Positions 1-7,935 of a stretch of DNA of 7,992 nt are shown here, piece by piece. How positions within the stretch are numbered: position 1 is the stretch's first letter; the number at the start of each line of letters is the position of its first letter. The notes below the pieces were generated by a model. It saw nothing but the letters and a program-made list of their open reading frames with translations. It was not told the origin of the DNA and did not search any database. The stretch is from Octopus sinensis (Eukaryota): assembly GCF_006345805.1 (NCBI RefSeq), contig NW_021828578.1:1-7992 (forward strand), given 5' to 3'. The translations under genes and the position numbers were made by a program.

Positions 1-128
1 AAGCATTGGTCGGCCCCGGGTCTATAGCAGAAGACACTTGCCCAAGATGCTACGCAGTGGGACTGAACCCGGAAACCGTGTGGCTGGTTAGCAAGCTACT
101 TACCACACAGCCACTCCTACGCCTATAT
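1..128 (-). mobile_element. Family A SINE, tRNA-like head and start of body (cut by window edge)
   Basis: Reverse complement aligns to the intact copy at 1976-2135: A-box-like TGGCTGTGTGG, B-box-like GGTTCAGTCCC, then CTTGGGCAAGTGTCTTCT. Confidence 0.9.
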
Positions 129-134
129 ATATAT

Positions 135-273
135 ATACGATGGGCTTCTTTCAGTTTCTGTCTACCAAATCCACTCACAAGTTATTGGTCGGCCTGGGGC
201 TATAGTAGAAGAACCCGGAACTGTGTGACTGGTTAGCAAGCTACTTACCACACAGCCACTCCTACGCCTATAT
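135..273 (-). mobile_element. Family A SINE head with a 32-bp internal deletion
   Basis: Matches the family A head but reads TAGAAGA|ACCCGG, lacking CACTTGCCCAAGGTGCCACGCAGTGGGACTGA (most of the B-box and the CORE-like segment). Confidence 0.88.
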
Positions 274-841: not shown

Positions 842-1066
842 TTTTACTCGTTTCAGTCATTTGGCTGTGGCCATACTGGAGCCTCGCCTTGAAGGGATTT
901 TTCCTTTCTTTTAGTCGAAAAAATCAACCTCCAGGACTTACTTTTTTAAGCCTAGTAATTATTCAGGCAGTCTCTTTTGCTGAAGATATGGGGGACATAA
1001 ATACACTAACACTGGTTATAAAGCAGTGGAATGGCAAAGGCAAACATAGACACAAAGACATACAGT
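842..1066 (-). mobile_element. Diverged 3' module and tail of a family A SINE
   Basis: TTTTACTCGTTTCAGTCATTTGGCTGTGGCCATACTGGAGC...CAGGACTTAC...GTCTCTTTTGCTGAA...GGGGACATAAATACAC is collinear with 4490-4690. Confidence 0.8.
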
Positions 1067-1298: not shown

Positions 1299-1602
1299 AT
1301 ATATATATGTTAACAATAGAACATATGCATATATATAAACATATATGTACGTACCTACCTCTACATGTACATATACACGCATATATGTGTACAGGACACC
1401 AAAAAGACGTCGAACACATAGAGAGACGAAAAACATAGACACAAACCAAGGAACAGGACAAGCAAAAAAGAAAAAAGAGATACCGGACATATAACACACG
1501 AAAAATCCCTTCTTCAGTCGCTAAGGTTTCATCTACTCTACGTTTCGAAGGATAAAAGCGAGACGTATACTTCGAAGAAACTTCCTTCCTGCGAAAAGCA
1601 AA
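1126..1602 (-). mobile_element. Putative non-autonomous hammerhead-bearing (Penelope-associated or retrozyme-like) segment
   Basis: Sits between TA runs, between the two halves of a family A SINE. It has an internal TA tract (1261-1308) and the hammerhead motifs at 1505-1570. No ORF and no clear target-site duplication (TSD); boundaries approximate. Confidence 0.4.
1505..1570 (-). ncRNA. Candidate hammerhead ribozyme with non-circularly permuted strand order
   Basis: Minus-strand RNA: GUA-UACGU-C-UCGCU-UUU-AUCCUUC-GAAA-CGUA-GAGUAGAUGAAACCUU-AGCGA-CUGAAGA-AGGGAU. Helix III UACGU/ACGUA 5 bp, helix I UCGCU/AGCGA 5 bp, helix II AUCCUU/AGGGAU 6 bp including one G-U. Cleavage triplet GUC at 1564-1562. 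Confidence 0.68.
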
Positions 1603-1610
1603 TATATATA

Positions 1611-1761
1611 TATACGATGGGCTTCTGTTCCTGTTTACCAAACCTACTCACAAGGCTTTGGTTGGCCTGAGGCTATAGTAGAAGACACTTGCCAAAGGTG
1701 CCATGCAGTGGGACTGAACCTTGAACCATGTGACTGGGAAGCAATCTTCTTATCACACAGC
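1611..1761 (-). mobile_element. Family A SINE head (diverged)
   Basis: TATACGATGGGCTTCT...CTCACAAGGCTTTGGTTGGCCTGAGGCTATAGTAGAAGACACTTGCCAAAGGTGCCATGCAGTGGGACTGAACC matches 4775-4930. Confidence 0.88.
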
Positions 1762-1975
1762 AAGAGACAACATCTCTTACTACATCACTTGTTGAGGTTT
1801 TCTCTACAGATTTTCTGTAGAAGTTATAACCAGTCAGTTTCATAGAGTAATGCCAAAGCAGACTTTGGAATACAGTGCAATCCTCAAACTCATCTGGACC
1901 TGTCTAACACTTCATCCCAACCCATACCAGGGTGGAACTTTGACATTAGACGACAACAACGATGATGATGATGAT

Positions 1976-2136
1976 GACGCAGGAGTGGCTGTGTGGTAAG
2001 TAGCTTGCTTACCAACCACATGGTTCCGGGTTCAGTCCCACTGCGTGGCACCTTGGGCAAGTGTCTTCTACTATAGCCTCGGGCCGACCAAGCCTTGTGA
2101 GTGGACTTGGTTGACGGAAACTGAAAGAAGCCCGTA

Positions 2137-2178
<42 letters not shown>

Positions 2179-2410
2179 TGTGTGTGTTTGTGTGTCTGTG
2201 TTTTTGTCCCCCTAGCACTGCTTGACAACCGATGCTGGTGTGCTTATGTCCCCGTTACTTAGCGGTTCGGCAAAAGAGACCGATAGAATAAGTACTGGGC
2301 TTACAAAAGAATAAGTCCCGGGGGTCGAGTTGCTCGATTAAAGTCGGTGCTCCAGCATGGCCGCAGTCAAATGACTGAAACAAGTAAAAAGAGTAGAGTA
2401 AAAAGAGTAA
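1976..2410 (+). mobile_element. Full-length family A composite SINE (tRNA-like head, CORE-like segment, TA/TG linker, 3' module, A-rich tail)
   Basis: A-box-like TGGCTGTGTGG 1986-1996 and B-box-like GGTTCAGTCCC 2029-2039. CCTTGGGCAAGT resembles the start of the CORE domain. Microsatellite linker ~2135-2200; tail (AGTAAAAAG)-like repeats to 2410. Multi-copy within the window. Confidence 0.92.
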
Positions 2411-2749: not shown

Positions 2750-3258
2750 TCTTTTCATTTGTTTTGGGTTTTTTTTTTCTTCTTTTGTTTGCCTTTGTTT
2801 CCCACCTCTCTCTATTTTTTTTTTGTCTTTTATATTCGGTGTTTGTGGTGTGTGGGTGTGTGGTGTGAGAGAGTCTGATGTGTGTTTGTGTGTGAGTGTG
2901 AGCTGTGCGGAGTTTTCTATTTTTCCGGTTTAGTTTTTATCATACATTGACATACAGATGCCTAACACACATATATGCGCATGTGTATATATATATATAT
3001 ATCATATATATATATACACATATATATATATATATGTGTATAATATATATATATATTATATATATATACATACCATACATATCAATATATTTGGTGTGTG
3101 TGTATATATGTATATATATATATATATATCTACTGAGAGAGAGAGAAAGCTTGAGAGATACTTAGATGTATATGTGTGCATTTATATATATCTGAATCTA
3201 TCTATCTATTTTATATATATGTGTGTGTGTGCGCGCGTGCTCAAATATATATTATACT

Positions 3259-3536: not shown

Positions 3537-3833
3537 TTTTTTTTTTTTAAGGAGCACTCTGTCAGTTATGATGACGAGGGTTCCAGCTGATACGATTAAC
3601 GGAACAGCCTGCTTGTGAAATGGATGTGCAAGTGGCTGAGTACTCCACAGATATGTGTACCCTTAATGTAGTTCTCTGGGAGATTCAGCATGACGCAGTG
3701 TGTGACAAGGCCAGACCTTTGAAATACAGGTGTAATTCTCATTTTTGCCAGTTGAGTGGACTGGAGCAACATGAAATAAAGTGTCTTGCTCAAGGACACA
3801 ACGCATTGCGAGGAATTGAACTCACGACCTTAC
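3537..3833 (-). mobile_element. Family C tRNA-derived SINE, 5'-truncated just upstream of the B-box, with poly(A) tail
   Basis: Minus strand reads GAGTTCAATTCC (B-box), then TGTGTCCTTGAGCAAGACACTTTATTTCATGTTGCTCCAGTCCACTC, also present in the element at 6075-6425. T12 at 3537-3548 is the poly(A) tail. Confidence 0.82.
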
Positions 3834-3975: not shown

Positions 3976-4027
3976 GCTCTGTGTGTGTGTGCCTGGCCTT
4001 TTTGTATTACTGGTATAGCCCATTCAA

Positions 4028-4244
4028 TGCGGCGAGCTGGCAGAAACGTTAGCATGCCGGGCGAAATGTGTAGTGGTATTTCGTCTGCCACTGCGTTCTG
4101 AGTTCAAATTCTGCCGAGGTCAGCTTTGCCTTTCATCCTTTCGGGGTCGATTAAATAAGTACCAGTTACACACTGGGGTCGATGTAATCGACTTAATACC
4201 TATGTTAATACCTATGTTTAGCCCCTTGTGGGTAATAAAGAAAT
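4028..4244 (+). mobile_element. Family B tRNA-derived SINE with 17-bp TSD
   Basis: Perfect direct repeat TGGTATAGCCCATTCAA at 4011-4027 and 4245-4261; B-box GAGTTCAAATTC 4100-4111; homologous to 7571-7798. Confidence 0.93.
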
Positions 4245-4267
4245 TGGTATAGCCCATTCAAGACTTT

Positions 4268-4489: not shown

Positions 4490-4930
4490 TTGTTTCAGTC
4501 ATTTTGACTGCGGCCATGCTGGAGCACCGCCTTTAATCGAGCAACTCGACCCCGGGACTTATTCTTTATAAGCCCAGTACTTATTCTATCGGTCTCTTTT
4601 GCTGAACCGCTAAGTGACAGGGACATAAACACACCAGCATCGTTTGTCAAGCAATGCTAGGGGGACAAACACATGACCACACAAACATACACGCACACAC
4701 ACACACACAAACCATAATATATCTTTATATATATATATATATATTATATATATATATATATATATCATATATATACGGGCTTCTTTCAGTTTCCCTCTAC
4801 CAAATCCACTCACAAGGCTTTGGTCGGCCCGAGGCTATAGTAGAAGACATTTGCCCAAGGTGCCACGGAGTGGGACTGAACCCGGAACCATGTGGTTGGT
4901 AAACAAGCTACTTACCACCCAGCCAGTCCT
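4490..4930 (-). mobile_element. Full-length family A composite SINE
   Basis: Reverse complement aligns end to end with 1976-2410; by manual comparison about 9 differences over the ~157-nt head. Confidence 0.92.

Positions 4931-5012: not shown

Positions 5013-5058
<46 letters not shown>
4985..5058. repeat. (CA)n microsatellite, interrupted
   Basis: Seen directly. Confidence 0.95.
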
Positions 5059-5060
<2 letters not shown>

Positions 5061-5322
5061 CATCTGTGCACTTGTACACTTTGCACACTTTTGTAATTTA
5101 TCTTTTCATTTTCTCACTGTTGTGTGTGTTTGTATTTGTGTATGTATGTGTGTGTATGTATGCATGCATATGTGTCTCTATACATACGTAGAGGATAGGT
5201 AGAAAGAGGGAGGAGGGAAACAAGATACAGAAGGGGAAGAGAGACCCCCCCCCCAACACACTGCACTCTATCTTCTTCATCTCCTACATCCTTCATTAAT
5301 GCCCTCCTAAATATTTGTTTGA

Positions 5323-5337: not shown

Positions 5338-5390
<53 letters not shown>

Positions 5391-5562
5391 GTGTGTGTCT
5401 ATATATATGTATATATATATGTGTGTATATATATATGTATATATATATATATATATGTGTATATATATATGTATATATATATATGTGTATATATATATGT
5501 ATATATATATATGTGTATATATATATGTGTATATATATATGTGTATATATATATATATATAT
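5323..5562. repeat. Compound (TG)/(TA) microsatellite
   Basis: Seen directly; produces the five overlapping Y/I/C/V ORFs. Confidence 0.95.
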
Positions 5563-5824
5563 GAATGTATGTATATCATTCCCCCTTCATTGCACCCCAT
5601 CATTTTTTTCAACACAAACCACTGACTTAATTAATTACCAGACCAATCGTTCAGAATCTTCTGATAACTTTATTCTAATTTGGTGATTCCAATAAATGTC
5701 ATTTTTTGAAACGGTAGTGATTTTCTCCATCACTCCTCCTCCCCCTCCTCCTCATTTCTGTTTTTTTTTTTCTATTTCCATTTTGCTTATTTTTGCATTC
5801 ATTTATTTTATTTTCCAATGTAAG

Positions 5825-6074: not shown

Positions 6075-6425
6075 AAGATCCCTTTTGGTCATGAATGACC
6101 ATGGGATTGTACCTAGGAAGTTACCCTTCAAGGCACAAGTCCAGGCAAGGTTGTTTATGGAAAACCAGCAGTCACCCATGCATACCAGTTGCCCCTCTTC
6201 ATGCCACTGATGCTATCCAAGGGAAAAAGCAAAGGTCGATACAGCTTGGTGCTAATGAATTGTCGTAACTCATTTCTACAGCTGATTGAACTGGAGCAAT
6301 GTAAAATAAAGTGTCTTGCTTAAGAACACAATGCAGAGCCTGGCCTGGGAATTGAACTCACTACCTTATGATTGTGAGCTTGACTGTGAACCCGACGCTC
6401 AAACCACTGAGCCATGCACTTTCAC
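6075..6425 (-). mobile_element. Family E tRNA-derived SINE (same head and body as family C, different 3' region)
   Basis: Minus-strand A-box TGGCTCAGTGG (6414-6404) and B-box GAGTTCAATTCCC (6359-6347); body 6270-6336 homologous to 3738-3805. The 3' boundary is approximate. Confidence 0.8.
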
Positions 6426-6944
6426 AAAATTAAGCTGATCCTTTGAAGGTAAAATTACCTTGCTTGTAAACGTGTGAGGTTTGGCAACAAGAAGGGGTCT
6501 CCCTCTGGATGTGTGTATACATACATATGCATATATCTATCTATTTATCGATCGATCAGTTGGTCAATATATATATTATGTGGTATAGTTTTAATTAGTA
6601 GAATAACACTTGATAAGTTAAGAGAATAAACATAATGTTATAATAAAAACCACAAGTCTTATTAAATACAGTTACCCAGGGTTTCCTGATCGAAGCAATT
6701 TATTTATTTCACTATTTTTCAAGCTGAGAACAAAACTATTTGTCAGTTGATGATGGCACCCTCAGCATCTCTCTCCCTCTTTGCAGTTGGAGAAGCCATG
6801 CAATCACGTTTCAGCAAGACCCCTATTCTGGCCTGTCGTGGGTTTGAATATCTCATTGCCAAGAATGTTATGATAACATTGGGTGTGCACAAGGGTGTAG
6901 GAATGATATTACCCAAATAAATATTTGGATATGGTTATCTAAAA

Positions 6945-7459: not shown

Positions 7460-7935
7460 GGGGTCTTGTCTTGCTGGTGACTTGGTGACCTCACCAGTGC
7501 TGGCTGGTGCCACAAAAGAAATAAAAAGCACATAGTACACTCTGTCAAGTGGTTGGCATTAGGAAGGGCAACGAGCTGGCAGAAATGTTAGCACGCCGGG
7601 CTAAATGCGTAGCCGTATTTCGTCTGCTGTTACGTTCTGAGTTCAAATTCCACCGAGGTCGACTTTGCCTTTCATTCTTTCGGGGGTCGATAAATTAAGT
7701 ACCAGTTACTCACTGGGGTCGATGTAATCAACTTAATCCTTGTGTTTGTCCTTGTTTGTCCCCTCTGTGTTTAGCCCCTTGTGGGTAGTAAAGAAATAGG
7801 CATTAGGAAGGGCATCCAGCTGTGAAAACCCTGCCAGAGCAGACATTGGTGCCCGGCACAGCCATTCTGGCTTGTTGGTTCCTGTAAAACCATCCCTCCC
7901 ATACCAACATGGAAGACAGAACATTAAACAATGTG
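7460..7935 (+). mobile_element. Family D retroposon fragment interrupted by a family B SINE
   Basis: Removing 7571-7814 restores ...GGTTGGCATTAGGAAGGGCATCCAGCTGTGAAAACC..., a motif I recall from RTE-related repeats. Family identity and boundaries are tentative. Confidence 0.55.
7571..7798 (+). mobile_element. Family B tRNA-derived SINE with 16-bp TSD
   Basis: Perfect direct repeat GGCATTAGGAAGGGCA at 7555-7570 and 7799-7814; B-box GAGTTCAAATTC 7639-7650; homologous to 4028-4244. Confidence 0.93.

What the first reader, a model, noticed from the sequence alone, without database searches (positions are those of the whole stretch)
1505..1570. Hammerhead ribozyme core with strands in a non-circularly permuted (pseudoknotted) order
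Seen on the minus strand, 5'-3': substrate strand UACGU-C-UCGCU (1567-1557), a 3-nt linker, AUCCUUC-GAAA-CGUA (1553-1539), a 16-nt linker, then AGCGA-CUGAAGA-AGGGAU (1522-1505). Helix I (1561-1557/1518-1522) and helix III (1563-1567/1543-1539) are each 5 perfect Watson-Crick pairs directly abutting the core, including the conserved A15.1-U16.1 pair and a GUC triplet. Helix II has GGAU/AUCC plus flanking pairs, with one extra unpaired base at the core junction. Established: types I, II and III are cyclic orders of the strands CUGANGA, GAAA and NUH; the order here (NUH, GAAA, CUGANGA) is the reverse cycle, so standard descriptors miss it. I recall that natural non-circularly permuted hammerheads have been reported, so the class may not be new, but this locus or family may be. 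Inference: linker lengths fit hammerhead geometry, short between the adjacent helix I and II ends and long from helix III back to helix I. It could fold as a pseudoknotted monomer or act as a dimer. Predicted cut is between plus-strand positions 1562 and 1561.
Basis: partly seen in the sequence, partly recalled or inferred. Interest (0 to 1): 0.92.

Follow-up and report, generated by a model that had tools for sequence, protein, structure and literature searches.

The report
Probable chance permuted-hammerhead look-alike
A 63-base stretch really does carry all the conserved letters and three short helices of a hammerhead ribozyme in the already published "type SGC" rearranged order, but it is a lone copy in repeat-rich animal-like DNA, lacks the fourth helix that known examples need, and is most likely a chance match.

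Summary
The strand order (cleavage-site block, GAAA block, CUGANGA block) is exactly the "type SGC" non-circular hammerhead permutation described and validated by Eckert et al. 2023 (PMC10085705), so the class is known. The match includes that type's 5-bp stem I and 3-nt stem I-to-II linker.

Four things count against a real ribozyme:
- The fourth helix that flanks the CUGANGA block, which was required for cleavage of SGC-3, is absent.
- Stem II needs a bulged C next to G12. Its most stable register instead pairs core bases G8 and A9.
- No second copy or homologue was found. The searchable collections do not cover this kind of genome, so that negative is weak.
- The locus is spacer DNA just 3' of a tRNA-derived SINE head, among microsatellites.

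In 320 Mb of Markov-model sequence, matches of at least 5/5/5 bp occur about 0.06 times per Mb. That is about 1e-3 per window but over 100 per Gb of genome.

Best reading is a chance constellation (about 0.75). An accidental or genuine type-SGC ribozyme is not excluded, and the decisive tests are a genome-wide homologue and covariation search and in vitro cleavage.

The parts
1557..1567 (-). Block S: UACGU (stem III 3' strand, U16.1 = 1563), C17 = 1562 (predicted cut 3' of it), UCGCU (stem I strand)
   Evidence: direct reading.
1554..1556 (-). 3-nt linker UUU from the distal end of stem I to the distal end of stem II
   Evidence: Its length equals the typical linker of published type-SGC ribozymes.
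1539..1553 (-). Block G: AUCCUU (stem II strand), bulged C1547, G12 A13 A14 (1546-1544), A15.1 (1543) and CGUA (stem III strand)
   Evidence: insertion flag on the G-block side.
1523..1538 (-). 16-nt linker GAGUAGAUGAAACCUU; contains AUGAAA (1532-1527), the only candidate 5' strand of a fourth helix
   Evidence: It gives 6 bp with UUUCGU (1503-1498) at offsets 4 and 1 from block C, with P about 0.29 in shuffles. There are 0 bp when the helix must abut block C as in the published examples.
1505..1522 (-). Block C: AGCGA (stem I strand), CUGAAGA core (1517-1511), AGGGAU (stem II strand)
   Evidence: This is the only CUGANGA on the minus strand of the window.
1508..1512 (-). GAAGG, which pairs perfectly with CCUUC (1551-1547): a competing stem II register that sequesters G8 and A9
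   Evidence: -15.9 against -14.0 kcal/mol.
1602..1775 (-). tRNA-derived SINE head (sense on the minus strand) ending in (TA)n at 1614-1602, immediately upstream of the candidate. This is context, not part of the motif.
   Evidence: families D8, D9, D11; inverted repeat I3; alignment to the copies at 1975-2150 and 4777-4930 stops at the (TA)n.

Best explanation
The stretch is a chance constellation. Single-copy spacer DNA just downstream of a SINE head in a repeat-rich eukaryotic genome happens to contain CUGAAGA, GAAA and GUC, flanked by three short complementary segments, in the order of the published type-SGC hammerhead permutation. It is not a selected ribozyme. If transcribed, it would mostly adopt other folds: stem III extended into the core, block C in a hairpin with the downstream U-rich tract, or stem II slipped by two bases onto G8 and A9. 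It would cleave poorly or not at all.

Shown here: the letters, the pairings, their chance frequency, the missing fourth helix and the competing register. Inferred: the lack of function.
For: Chance frequency:
- Matches of at least 5/5/5 bp with an exact core, in any of the six block orders, occur 20 times in 320 Mb of window-trained Markov sequence. One of them has all-Watson-Crick stems I and III.
- That is tens to hundreds per Gb of genome. Eckert et al. likewise expected false positives and kept only hits with covariation.

Fourth helix:
- The helix formed by the sequences flanking block C is 7-8 bp and abuts the block in SGC-1/2/3. Disrupting it abolished cleavage of SGC-3.
- Here it is 0 bp at offsets of 2 or less. 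Only a 6-bp A/U-rich pairing exists at offsets 4 and 1, which 29% of shuffles equal.

Stem II junction:
- The hammerhead register needs a bulged C1547 beside G12 and has A-U rather than the usual G-C at 10.1-11.1.
- The three-block fold prefers GAAGG/CCUUC, pairing G8 and A9. The same test returns the exact hammerhead junction for SGC-1, SGC-2 and SGC-3.

Other observations:
- The nested fold of 1490-1585(-) is unremarkable: -18.6 kcal/mol, z = +0.51.
- There is no second copy in the window, no Rfam match at the locus, and no match in the metagenome, viral or prokaryote collections.
- Four of the five stem III pairs come from two copies of the self-complementary tetramer ACGU, so that stem carries less information than it appears to (direct reading).
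Against: - Per window the match is rare: about 1e-3 at 5/5/5, about 2e-4 for the S-G-C order, and about 5e-5 with all-Watson-Crick stems I and III, the last from a single simulated hit.
- It reproduces two specific hallmarks of real type-SGC ribozymes: a 5-bp stem I and a 3-nt stem I-to-II linker.
- All core bases are canonical, including GUC and A15.1-U16.1.
- The 200-nt segment holding it (1401-1600) has the highest CpG content of the window (observed/expected 1.55 against 0.54 overall), as expected for a young repeat copy. It lies in sense orientation just 3' of a SINE head, so it could belong to an uncharacterised repeat family.
- The homologue searches are uninformative. The protein collection does not even hold ORFs from this window's abundant SINE, and no eukaryotic genome collection was available.
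- The energy gap between the two stem II registers is only 1.9 kcal/mol.
Confidence: 0.75

Rival explanations
1. Accidental ribozyme. The sequence was not selected for catalysis, but it folds into the type-SGC hammerhead often enough to cleave slowly at C1562 in vitro at high Mg2+, as a monomer. This would resemble the single-sequence GCS-1 candidate of Eckert et al., which cleaved incompletely and whose biological meaning is unclear.
For: The core is complete and stems I and III abut it perfectly. The hammerhead register is only 1.9 kcal/mol above the best three-block fold. The 3-nt linker matches the geometry of the active type-SGC ribozymes. GCS-1, a lone match with no covariation, did cleave in vitro.
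Against: There is no fourth helix, and its disruption abolished cleavage in SGC-3. C1547 is bulged beside G12 and 10.1-11.1 is A-U. Competing folds sequester G8/A9, or G12/A13 through an extension of stem III. Published type-SGC ribozymes are already at the slow end for hammerheads.
Confidence: 0.14
2. Genuine, selected type-SGC hammerhead. The CpG-rich segment 1400-1600 would be a copy of an uncharacterised repeat, possibly transcribed from the upstream SINE head, whose RNA is processed by the ribozyme. That would make it the first permuted hammerhead family in an animal genome.
For: The match is rare per window. It has the type-SGC hallmarks. The segment has the highest CpG observed/expected ratio in the window, like the young repeat copies at 4001-4200 and 7501-7700. 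It is in sense orientation 35 nt downstream of a SINE head, and a T5 run follows directly after block C.
Against: Other copies of the same SINE in the window do not carry this sequence, and homology stops at the (TA)n. T4 runs at 1592-1589 and inside the motif (1557-1554) would tend to stop RNA polymerase III before or within it; this rests on established knowledge of Pol III termination and was not tested. Eckert et al. searched all RefSeq for type-SGC patterns and reported only metagenome and metatranscriptome families. The fourth helix is missing and the stem II junction is defective.
Confidence: 0.06
3. A hammerhead assembled in trans or as a dimer. Two transcripts (or two copies) would supply the blocks to each other, avoiding the pseudoknotted monomer.
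For: The three blocks form stems I and III as a multi-strand complex. From established knowledge, the minimal hammerheads of Penelope-like elements act as dimers.
Against: Only one copy is present. The same stem II register problem applies, and nothing specific supports dimerisation.
Confidence: 0.02

Closest known systems
Type-SGC hammerhead ribozymes (HRIMA-1 motif, 407 sequences, plus 176 'type-SGC variants'; Eckert et al., NAR 2023, PMC10085705)
   Same: The block order S-G-C is identical. All conserved core bases are present. Stems I and III of 5 bp abut the core. A 3-nt linker joins stem I to stem II and a longer second linker lies within the published 0-44 nt range. The cleavage site is predicted 3' of C17.
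   Different: There is no abutting fourth helix around block C. The extra base at the stem II junction is a C on the GAAA side, whereas SGC-1/2/3 have a U after CUGAUGA. 10.1-11.1 is A-U rather than G-C. The stem II register is ambiguous. There is no sequence similarity in the stems. The setting is eukaryotic repeat-rich DNA rather than the metatranscriptomes and metagenomes rich in hairpin ribozymes in which the family was found. It is a single sequence with no covariation.
GCS-1, the lone type-GCS candidate from Caballeronia peredens (same paper)
   Same: It is a single descriptor match with every expected feature but no homologues, so its biological relevance cannot be judged from sequence.
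   Different: GCS-1 has no junction insertion and was shown to cleave in vitro. The present candidate is untested and structurally weaker.
Canonical type I and type III hammerheads of metazoan retrozymes, Penelope-like elements and SINE-like satellites (for example Cervera and de la Pena 2020, PMC7229834; Schistosoma and newt satellite hammerheads, from my own knowledge)
   Same: An animal-genome setting next to retroelement-derived repeats.
   Different: Those are circular permutations (nested three-way junctions), occur in many copies, often in tandem, and are detected by the Rfam models. Here there is one copy, a non-circular order, and no Rfam hammerhead hit anywhere in the window.

Membership tests
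Type-SGC hammerhead ribozyme | Blocks occur 5'-to-3' as S (cleavage site), G (GAAA), C (CUGAnGA) | tested here: met
   the only hit in the window, order SGC. The descriptor was validated on SGC-1/2/3.
Type-SGC hammerhead ribozyme | All conserved core bases: C3 U4 G5 A6 N7 G8 A9, G12 A13 A14, the A15.1-U16.1 pair, and H17 | tested here: met
   CUGAAGA at 1517-1511, GAAA at 1546-1543, U1563 pairs with A1543, C1562.
Type-SGC hammerhead ribozyme | Stems I, II and III directly adjoin the core within each block (at most 1-2 inserted bases) and form as the stable pairing | tested here: inconclusive
   Stems I and III are 5 Watson-Crick pairs each and abut the core. Stem II needs a bulged C1547 and has A-U at 10.1-11.1. 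The three-block minimum-energy fold uses GAAGG/CCUUC instead, which pairs G8 and A9. The published SGC-1/2/3 give the exact hammerhead junction in the same test.
Type-SGC hammerhead ribozyme | Short (typically 3-nt) linker from stem I to stem II | tested here: met
   UUU at 1556-1554; the criterion comes.
Type-SGC hammerhead ribozyme | Fourth helix formed by the sequences immediately 5' and 3' of block C, holding stems I and II together (required for SGC-3 activity) | tested here: not met
   0 bp at offsets of 2 or less. The best alternative is 6 bp, AUGAAA/UUUCGU, at offsets 4 and 1, reached by 29% of shuffles. The published examples have 7-8 bp abutting block C, as read from the reconstructed sequences.
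Type-SGC hammerhead ribozyme | Covariation in the stems among homologues | not testable with these tools
   No homologue was found. The collections lack this kind of eukaryotic genome: the window's own SINE finds nothing either.
Type-SGC hammerhead ribozyme | Site-specific self-cleavage 3' of position 17, abolished by mutating G5 | not testable with these tools
   This requires an in vitro transcription and cleavage assay.
HRIMA-1 motif (the sequence family proper) | Perfectly conserved stem I (AUGUU/AACAU) and a GGACC/GGUCC-type stem II, as in SGC-1 and SGC-2 | tested here: not met
   The candidate's stem I is UCGCU/AGCGA and its stem II is AUCCUU/AGGGAU. It could at most be an independent 'variant', not a homologue.
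Canonical hammerheads (Rfam Hammerhead_1, _II, _3, HH9, HH10) | Nested three-way junction detectable by the family covariance models | tested here: not met
   No hammerhead family appears among the 71 matches at E up to 10 in the window. This is expected for a pseudoknotted order.

The most novel reading that the evidence does not exclude
The CpG-rich segment 1400-1600 is a copy of an unrecognised repeat family of an animal (probably cephalopod) genome that carries a working type-SGC hammerhead downstream of a tRNA-derived SINE head. That would be the first non-circularly permuted ribozyme in a eukaryotic genome, and a minimal one that works without the fourth helix.
Probability: 0.05. Interest if true: 0.75.

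Novelty: not a real feature. Interest (0 to 1): 0.13.

Why it matters
If the motif were a working, conserved ribozyme, it would extend non-circularly permuted hammerheads from environmental metatranscriptome and metagenome sequences to an animal genome and link them to SINE biology. That would interest ribozyme and transposon specialists. As it stands, the result is mainly a caution. An exact hammerhead core with three 5-6 bp helices in a permuted order is expected on the order of a hundred times per gigabase by chance. A single match without covariation, without the fourth helix and with a slipped stem II should therefore not be called a ribozyme.

Tried and rejected
- **Rfam scan.** The whole window was scanned at E up to 10. 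There was no hammerhead or other ribozyme hit. The hits are miRNA-family models landing on TA/TG microsatellites and were rejected as low-complexity artefacts.
- **Finding the source contig or paralogues by exact ORF look-up.** Four window ORFs, including the 162-aa ORF that spans the motif, were tried. None is on record.
- **Protein-level homologue search with the spanning ORF.** It found none. A control with a peptide from the window's abundant SINE found not even word-sharing candidates, so these negatives carry no weight.
- **Family-level DNA pattern.** The pattern kept stem I and the core, with stem II, the distal part of stem III and the linkers free. It gave 0 matches in the metagenome, viral and prokaryote genome collections. 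No eukaryotic collection is available.
- **Fetching natural HRIMA-1 examples as a yardstick.** I searched for their S-G junction pattern. The 7 loci returned (L001-L007) all lack a CUGANGA block, so they are chance matches and were not used.
- **Covariance model from SGC-1/2/3.** MAFFT misaligned the S block of SGC-3. Three sequences and a structure that is mostly pseudoknotted would give an essentially sequence-only model, so I abandoned this in favour of a block-by-block comparison.
- **Pfam scan of six window ORFs and tRNA scan.** Both found nothing.
- **Literature searches.** Searches for permuted hammerheads in molluscs or cephalopods, and for the SINE sequence itself, gave no report of such a motif. 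The organism was not confirmed.

Full report
**Observation**

- UACGU (1567-1563), C1562, UCGCU (1561-1557)
- UUU (1556-1554)
- AUCCUUC (1553-1547), GAAA (1546-1543), CGUA (1542-1539)
- a 16-nt linker (1538-1523)
- AGCGA (1522-1518), CUGAAGA (1517-1511), AGGGAU (1510-1505)

Stem I (UCGCU/AGCGA) and stem III (UACGU/ACGUA, including A15.1-U16.1) are each five Watson-Crick pairs that abut the core. The triplet is GUC. Stem II is six pairs (one G-U) provided C1547 is left unpaired between stem II and G12.

I wrote a descriptor that demands the exact core. It allows any of the six block orders, stems of at least 4 bp, at most one inserted base at the stem II junction, and linkers of up to 60 nt. 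It finds this and nothing else on either strand of the window. The same code recovers the four published permuted ribozymes SGC-1, SGC-2, SGC-3 and GCS-1.

**What the arrangement corresponds to**

Eckert, Friedrich, Weinberg and Weinberg (NAR 2023, PMC10085705) divide the hammerhead into three blocks: S (cleavage site), G (GAAA) and C (CUGAnGA). Types I, II and III are CGS, GSC and SCG. They discovered and validated the non-circular order SGC: 407 HRIMA-1 sequences plus 176 variants from metatranscriptomes and metagenomes. CSG has weaker support and GCS rests on a single sequence.

The present candidate is S-G-C, so the class is already known. According to the paper, type-SGC ribozymes have:
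- a 5-bp stem I;
- a linker of typically three nucleotides from stem I to stem II;
- 0-44 nt after stem III;
- a fourth helix, formed by the sequences immediately 5' and 3' of block C, that ties stems I and II together.

Disrupting any of the four helices abolished cleavage of SGC-3, and compensatory changes restored it. I reconstructed SGC-1, SGC-2 and SGC-3 from the oligonucleotide table. All three have a 7-8 bp fourth helix abutting block C and an extra U between CUGAUGA and stem II.

**Agreement and disagreement with that type**

The candidate shares the block order, the full core, the 5-bp stem I, the 3-nt linker and an admissible second linker. It differs in three respects.

1. *Fourth helix.* With at most two spacer bases on either side of block C, as in the published ribozymes, there are no pairs at all. 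The best alternative is AUGAAA (1532-1527) with UUUCGU (1503-1498), offset by 4 and 1 bases. Shuffles of the same flanks equal or beat it 29% of the time.

2. *Stem II junction.* The hammerhead register needs a bulged C1547 next to G12 and puts an A-U pair at 10.1-11.1, where natural hammerheads nearly always have G-C (the G-C preference is from my own knowledge). The alternative register, with an extra A after A9 by analogy with the extra U of SGC-1/2/3, gives only G-C, G-U, G-U and evaluates to -8.2 kcal/mol.

3. *Register competition.* I folded the three blocks as separate strands, which removes the pseudoknot problem. SGC-1, SGC-2 and SGC-3 each return exactly the hammerhead three-way junction as the minimum-energy structure. 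The candidate returns stems I and III but pairs GAAGG (1512-1508) with CCUUC (1551-1547), which buries G8 and A9. That fold scores -15.9 kcal/mol against -14.0 for the hammerhead register.

The ordinary nested fold of 1490-1585(-) is unremarkable at -18.6 kcal/mol, z = +0.51. It extends stem III into G12/A13 and places block C in a hairpin with the downstream U-rich tract.

**Chance**

The null was 320 Mb of order-2 Markov sequence trained on the window with 1480-1600 left out. Shorter runs with orders 1-3 agree within counting error.

| Match quality | Hits in 320 Mb | Per 8-kb window (both strands) | Per Gb of genome |
|---|---|---|---|
| at least 4/4/4 bp, any order | 185 | not computed | not computed |
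| at least 5/5/5 bp, any order | 20 | about 1e-3 | about 125 |
| at least 5/5/5 bp, S-G-C order | 4 | about 2e-4 | about 25 |
| at least 5/5/5 bp, stems I and III all Watson-Crick | 1 | about 5e-5 (single count, very uncertain) | about 6 |

The match is therefore unusual for one window but expected many times in a large genome. That is why Eckert et al. treated descriptor hits as presumptive false positives unless Infernal searches produced covariation.

Stem III also carries less information than five pairs suggest. Four of them come from two copies of the self-complementary tetramer ACGU.

A Markov null is only an approximation of real repeat-rich DNA. The descriptor should be run on the true genome.

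**Context**

The window looks eukaryotic and is full of (TA)n, (CA)n and similar microsatellites. It also holds several copies of tRNA-derived SINE-like repeats (families D8-D11, D12/D14, inverted repeats I1-I3). From memory these resemble octopod cephalopod SINEs. I could not verify the organism.

One SINE head lies in sense orientation on the minus strand at about 1775-1615 and ends in (TA)n at 1614-1602. The candidate starts 35 nt further downstream. Alignment with the two other copies of that SINE shows that homology stops at the (TA)n, so the candidate is not part of the SINE as represented elsewhere in the window.

There is no second copy of 1400-1600 in the window. The only notable match is a 13-mer, GAAGGGATTTTTC, shared with 891-903.

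The segment 1401-1600 has the highest CpG content of the window: 12 CpG, observed/expected 1.55 against 0.54 overall. That is what a young repeat copy would look like, and it is the main reason I keep a small probability for a repeat-borne ribozyme.

Runs of four or five T on the minus strand lie before (1592-1589), within (1557-1554) and right after (1504-1500) the motif. From established knowledge, the first two would hinder a read-through polymerase III transcript from the SINE head. This was not tested.

**Homologues**

None could be obtained.
- Exact ORF look-ups returned nothing.
- A protein search with the ORF spanning the motif returned nothing.
- A family-level DNA pattern in the metagenome, viral and prokaryotic genome collections returned nothing.

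These negatives are weak. A peptide from the window's own abundant SINE finds nothing either, and no eukaryotic genome collection was available. Covariation, the criterion that decides such cases, could not be tested.

**Verdict**

The locus itself is most likely a chance look-alike (0.75). My reasons are the missing fourth helix, the defective and slippery stem II junction, the single copy, the ordinary fold energy, the repeat-spacer context and a chance rate that is high at genome scale.

About 0.14 goes to an accidental ribozyme that would cleave weakly in vitro, as the lone GCS-1 did. About 0.06 goes to a genuine selected type-SGC hammerhead on an unrecognised repeat, and about 0.02 to a trans or dimer version. 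The remaining 0.03 is unassigned.

The decisive steps are a nucleotide search of the source genome and its relatives with a covariation test, an empirical genome-wide background count, and an in vitro cleavage assay with a G5 mutant.

Noticed in passing
window 1401-1600: This segment has the highest CpG content in the window: 12 CpG in 200 nt, observed/expected 1.55, against 0.54 for the whole window. The only comparable stretches are two copies of a repeat. It suggests a young or unmethylated insertion.
   Followed up: partly
window 1-137, 142-270, 1602-1775(-), 1975-2135(+), 4777-4930: At least five copies or fragments of one tRNA-derived SINE head, each ending in a (TA)n microsatellite. Two of them are in tandem at the window start. 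ARAGORN calls none a tRNA. They resemble octopod SINEs from memory; the organism was not verified.
   Followed up: partly
window 2135-2400 and 4490-4737 (inverted, 84% over 173 nt); diverged copy 840-1068: A second repeat unit (a 'body', about 200 nt) sits on the far side of the microsatellite from the SINE head in two copies. It is absent downstream of the head at 1602-1775, where the candidate lies instead.
   Followed up: partly
window 4033-4250 and 7572-7803: Two direct copies (86-90% identical) of another CpG-rich, tRNA-like repeat (families D12, D14, D17).
   Followed up: no
window 3749-3805 and 6279-6335: Two copies (84% identical) of a further short repeat, CAGYTGAKTGRACTGGAGCAA...AAATAAAGTGTCTTGCT (family D15).
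   Followed up: no
window 891-903 (+) and 1500-1512 (-): An exact 13-mer, GAAGGGATTTTTC, is shared between the stem II strand of block C plus its 3' flank and the diverged repeat body at 840-1068 (E = 0.019 in that small search). It may be coincidence or a trace of common origin.
   Followed up: no
window 6775-6920 (+): A polypyrimidine tract plus 'tttgcag' is followed by an open frame (VGEAMQSRFSKTPILACRGFEYLIAKNVMITLGVHKGVGMILPK*). It looks like a possible terminal exon, but has no Pfam match.
   Followed up: partly
window 2965-3130, 5018-5190, 5356-5580 and other microsatellites: Rfam miRNA models (mir-3149, mir-297, mir-466 and others) score up to 56 bits on TA/TG/CA microsatellites, all below their gathering thresholds. 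These are low-complexity artefacts.
   Followed up: yes
L001-L007 (metagenome contigs): The 18-base HRIMA-1 S-G junction pattern GTCATGTTNNNGGACCGAAAC occurs 7 times in the metagenome collection without any CUGANGA block nearby. These are partial hammerhead-like matches arising by chance, and the collection apparently lacks the metatranscriptomes that hold HRIMA-1.
   Followed up: yes
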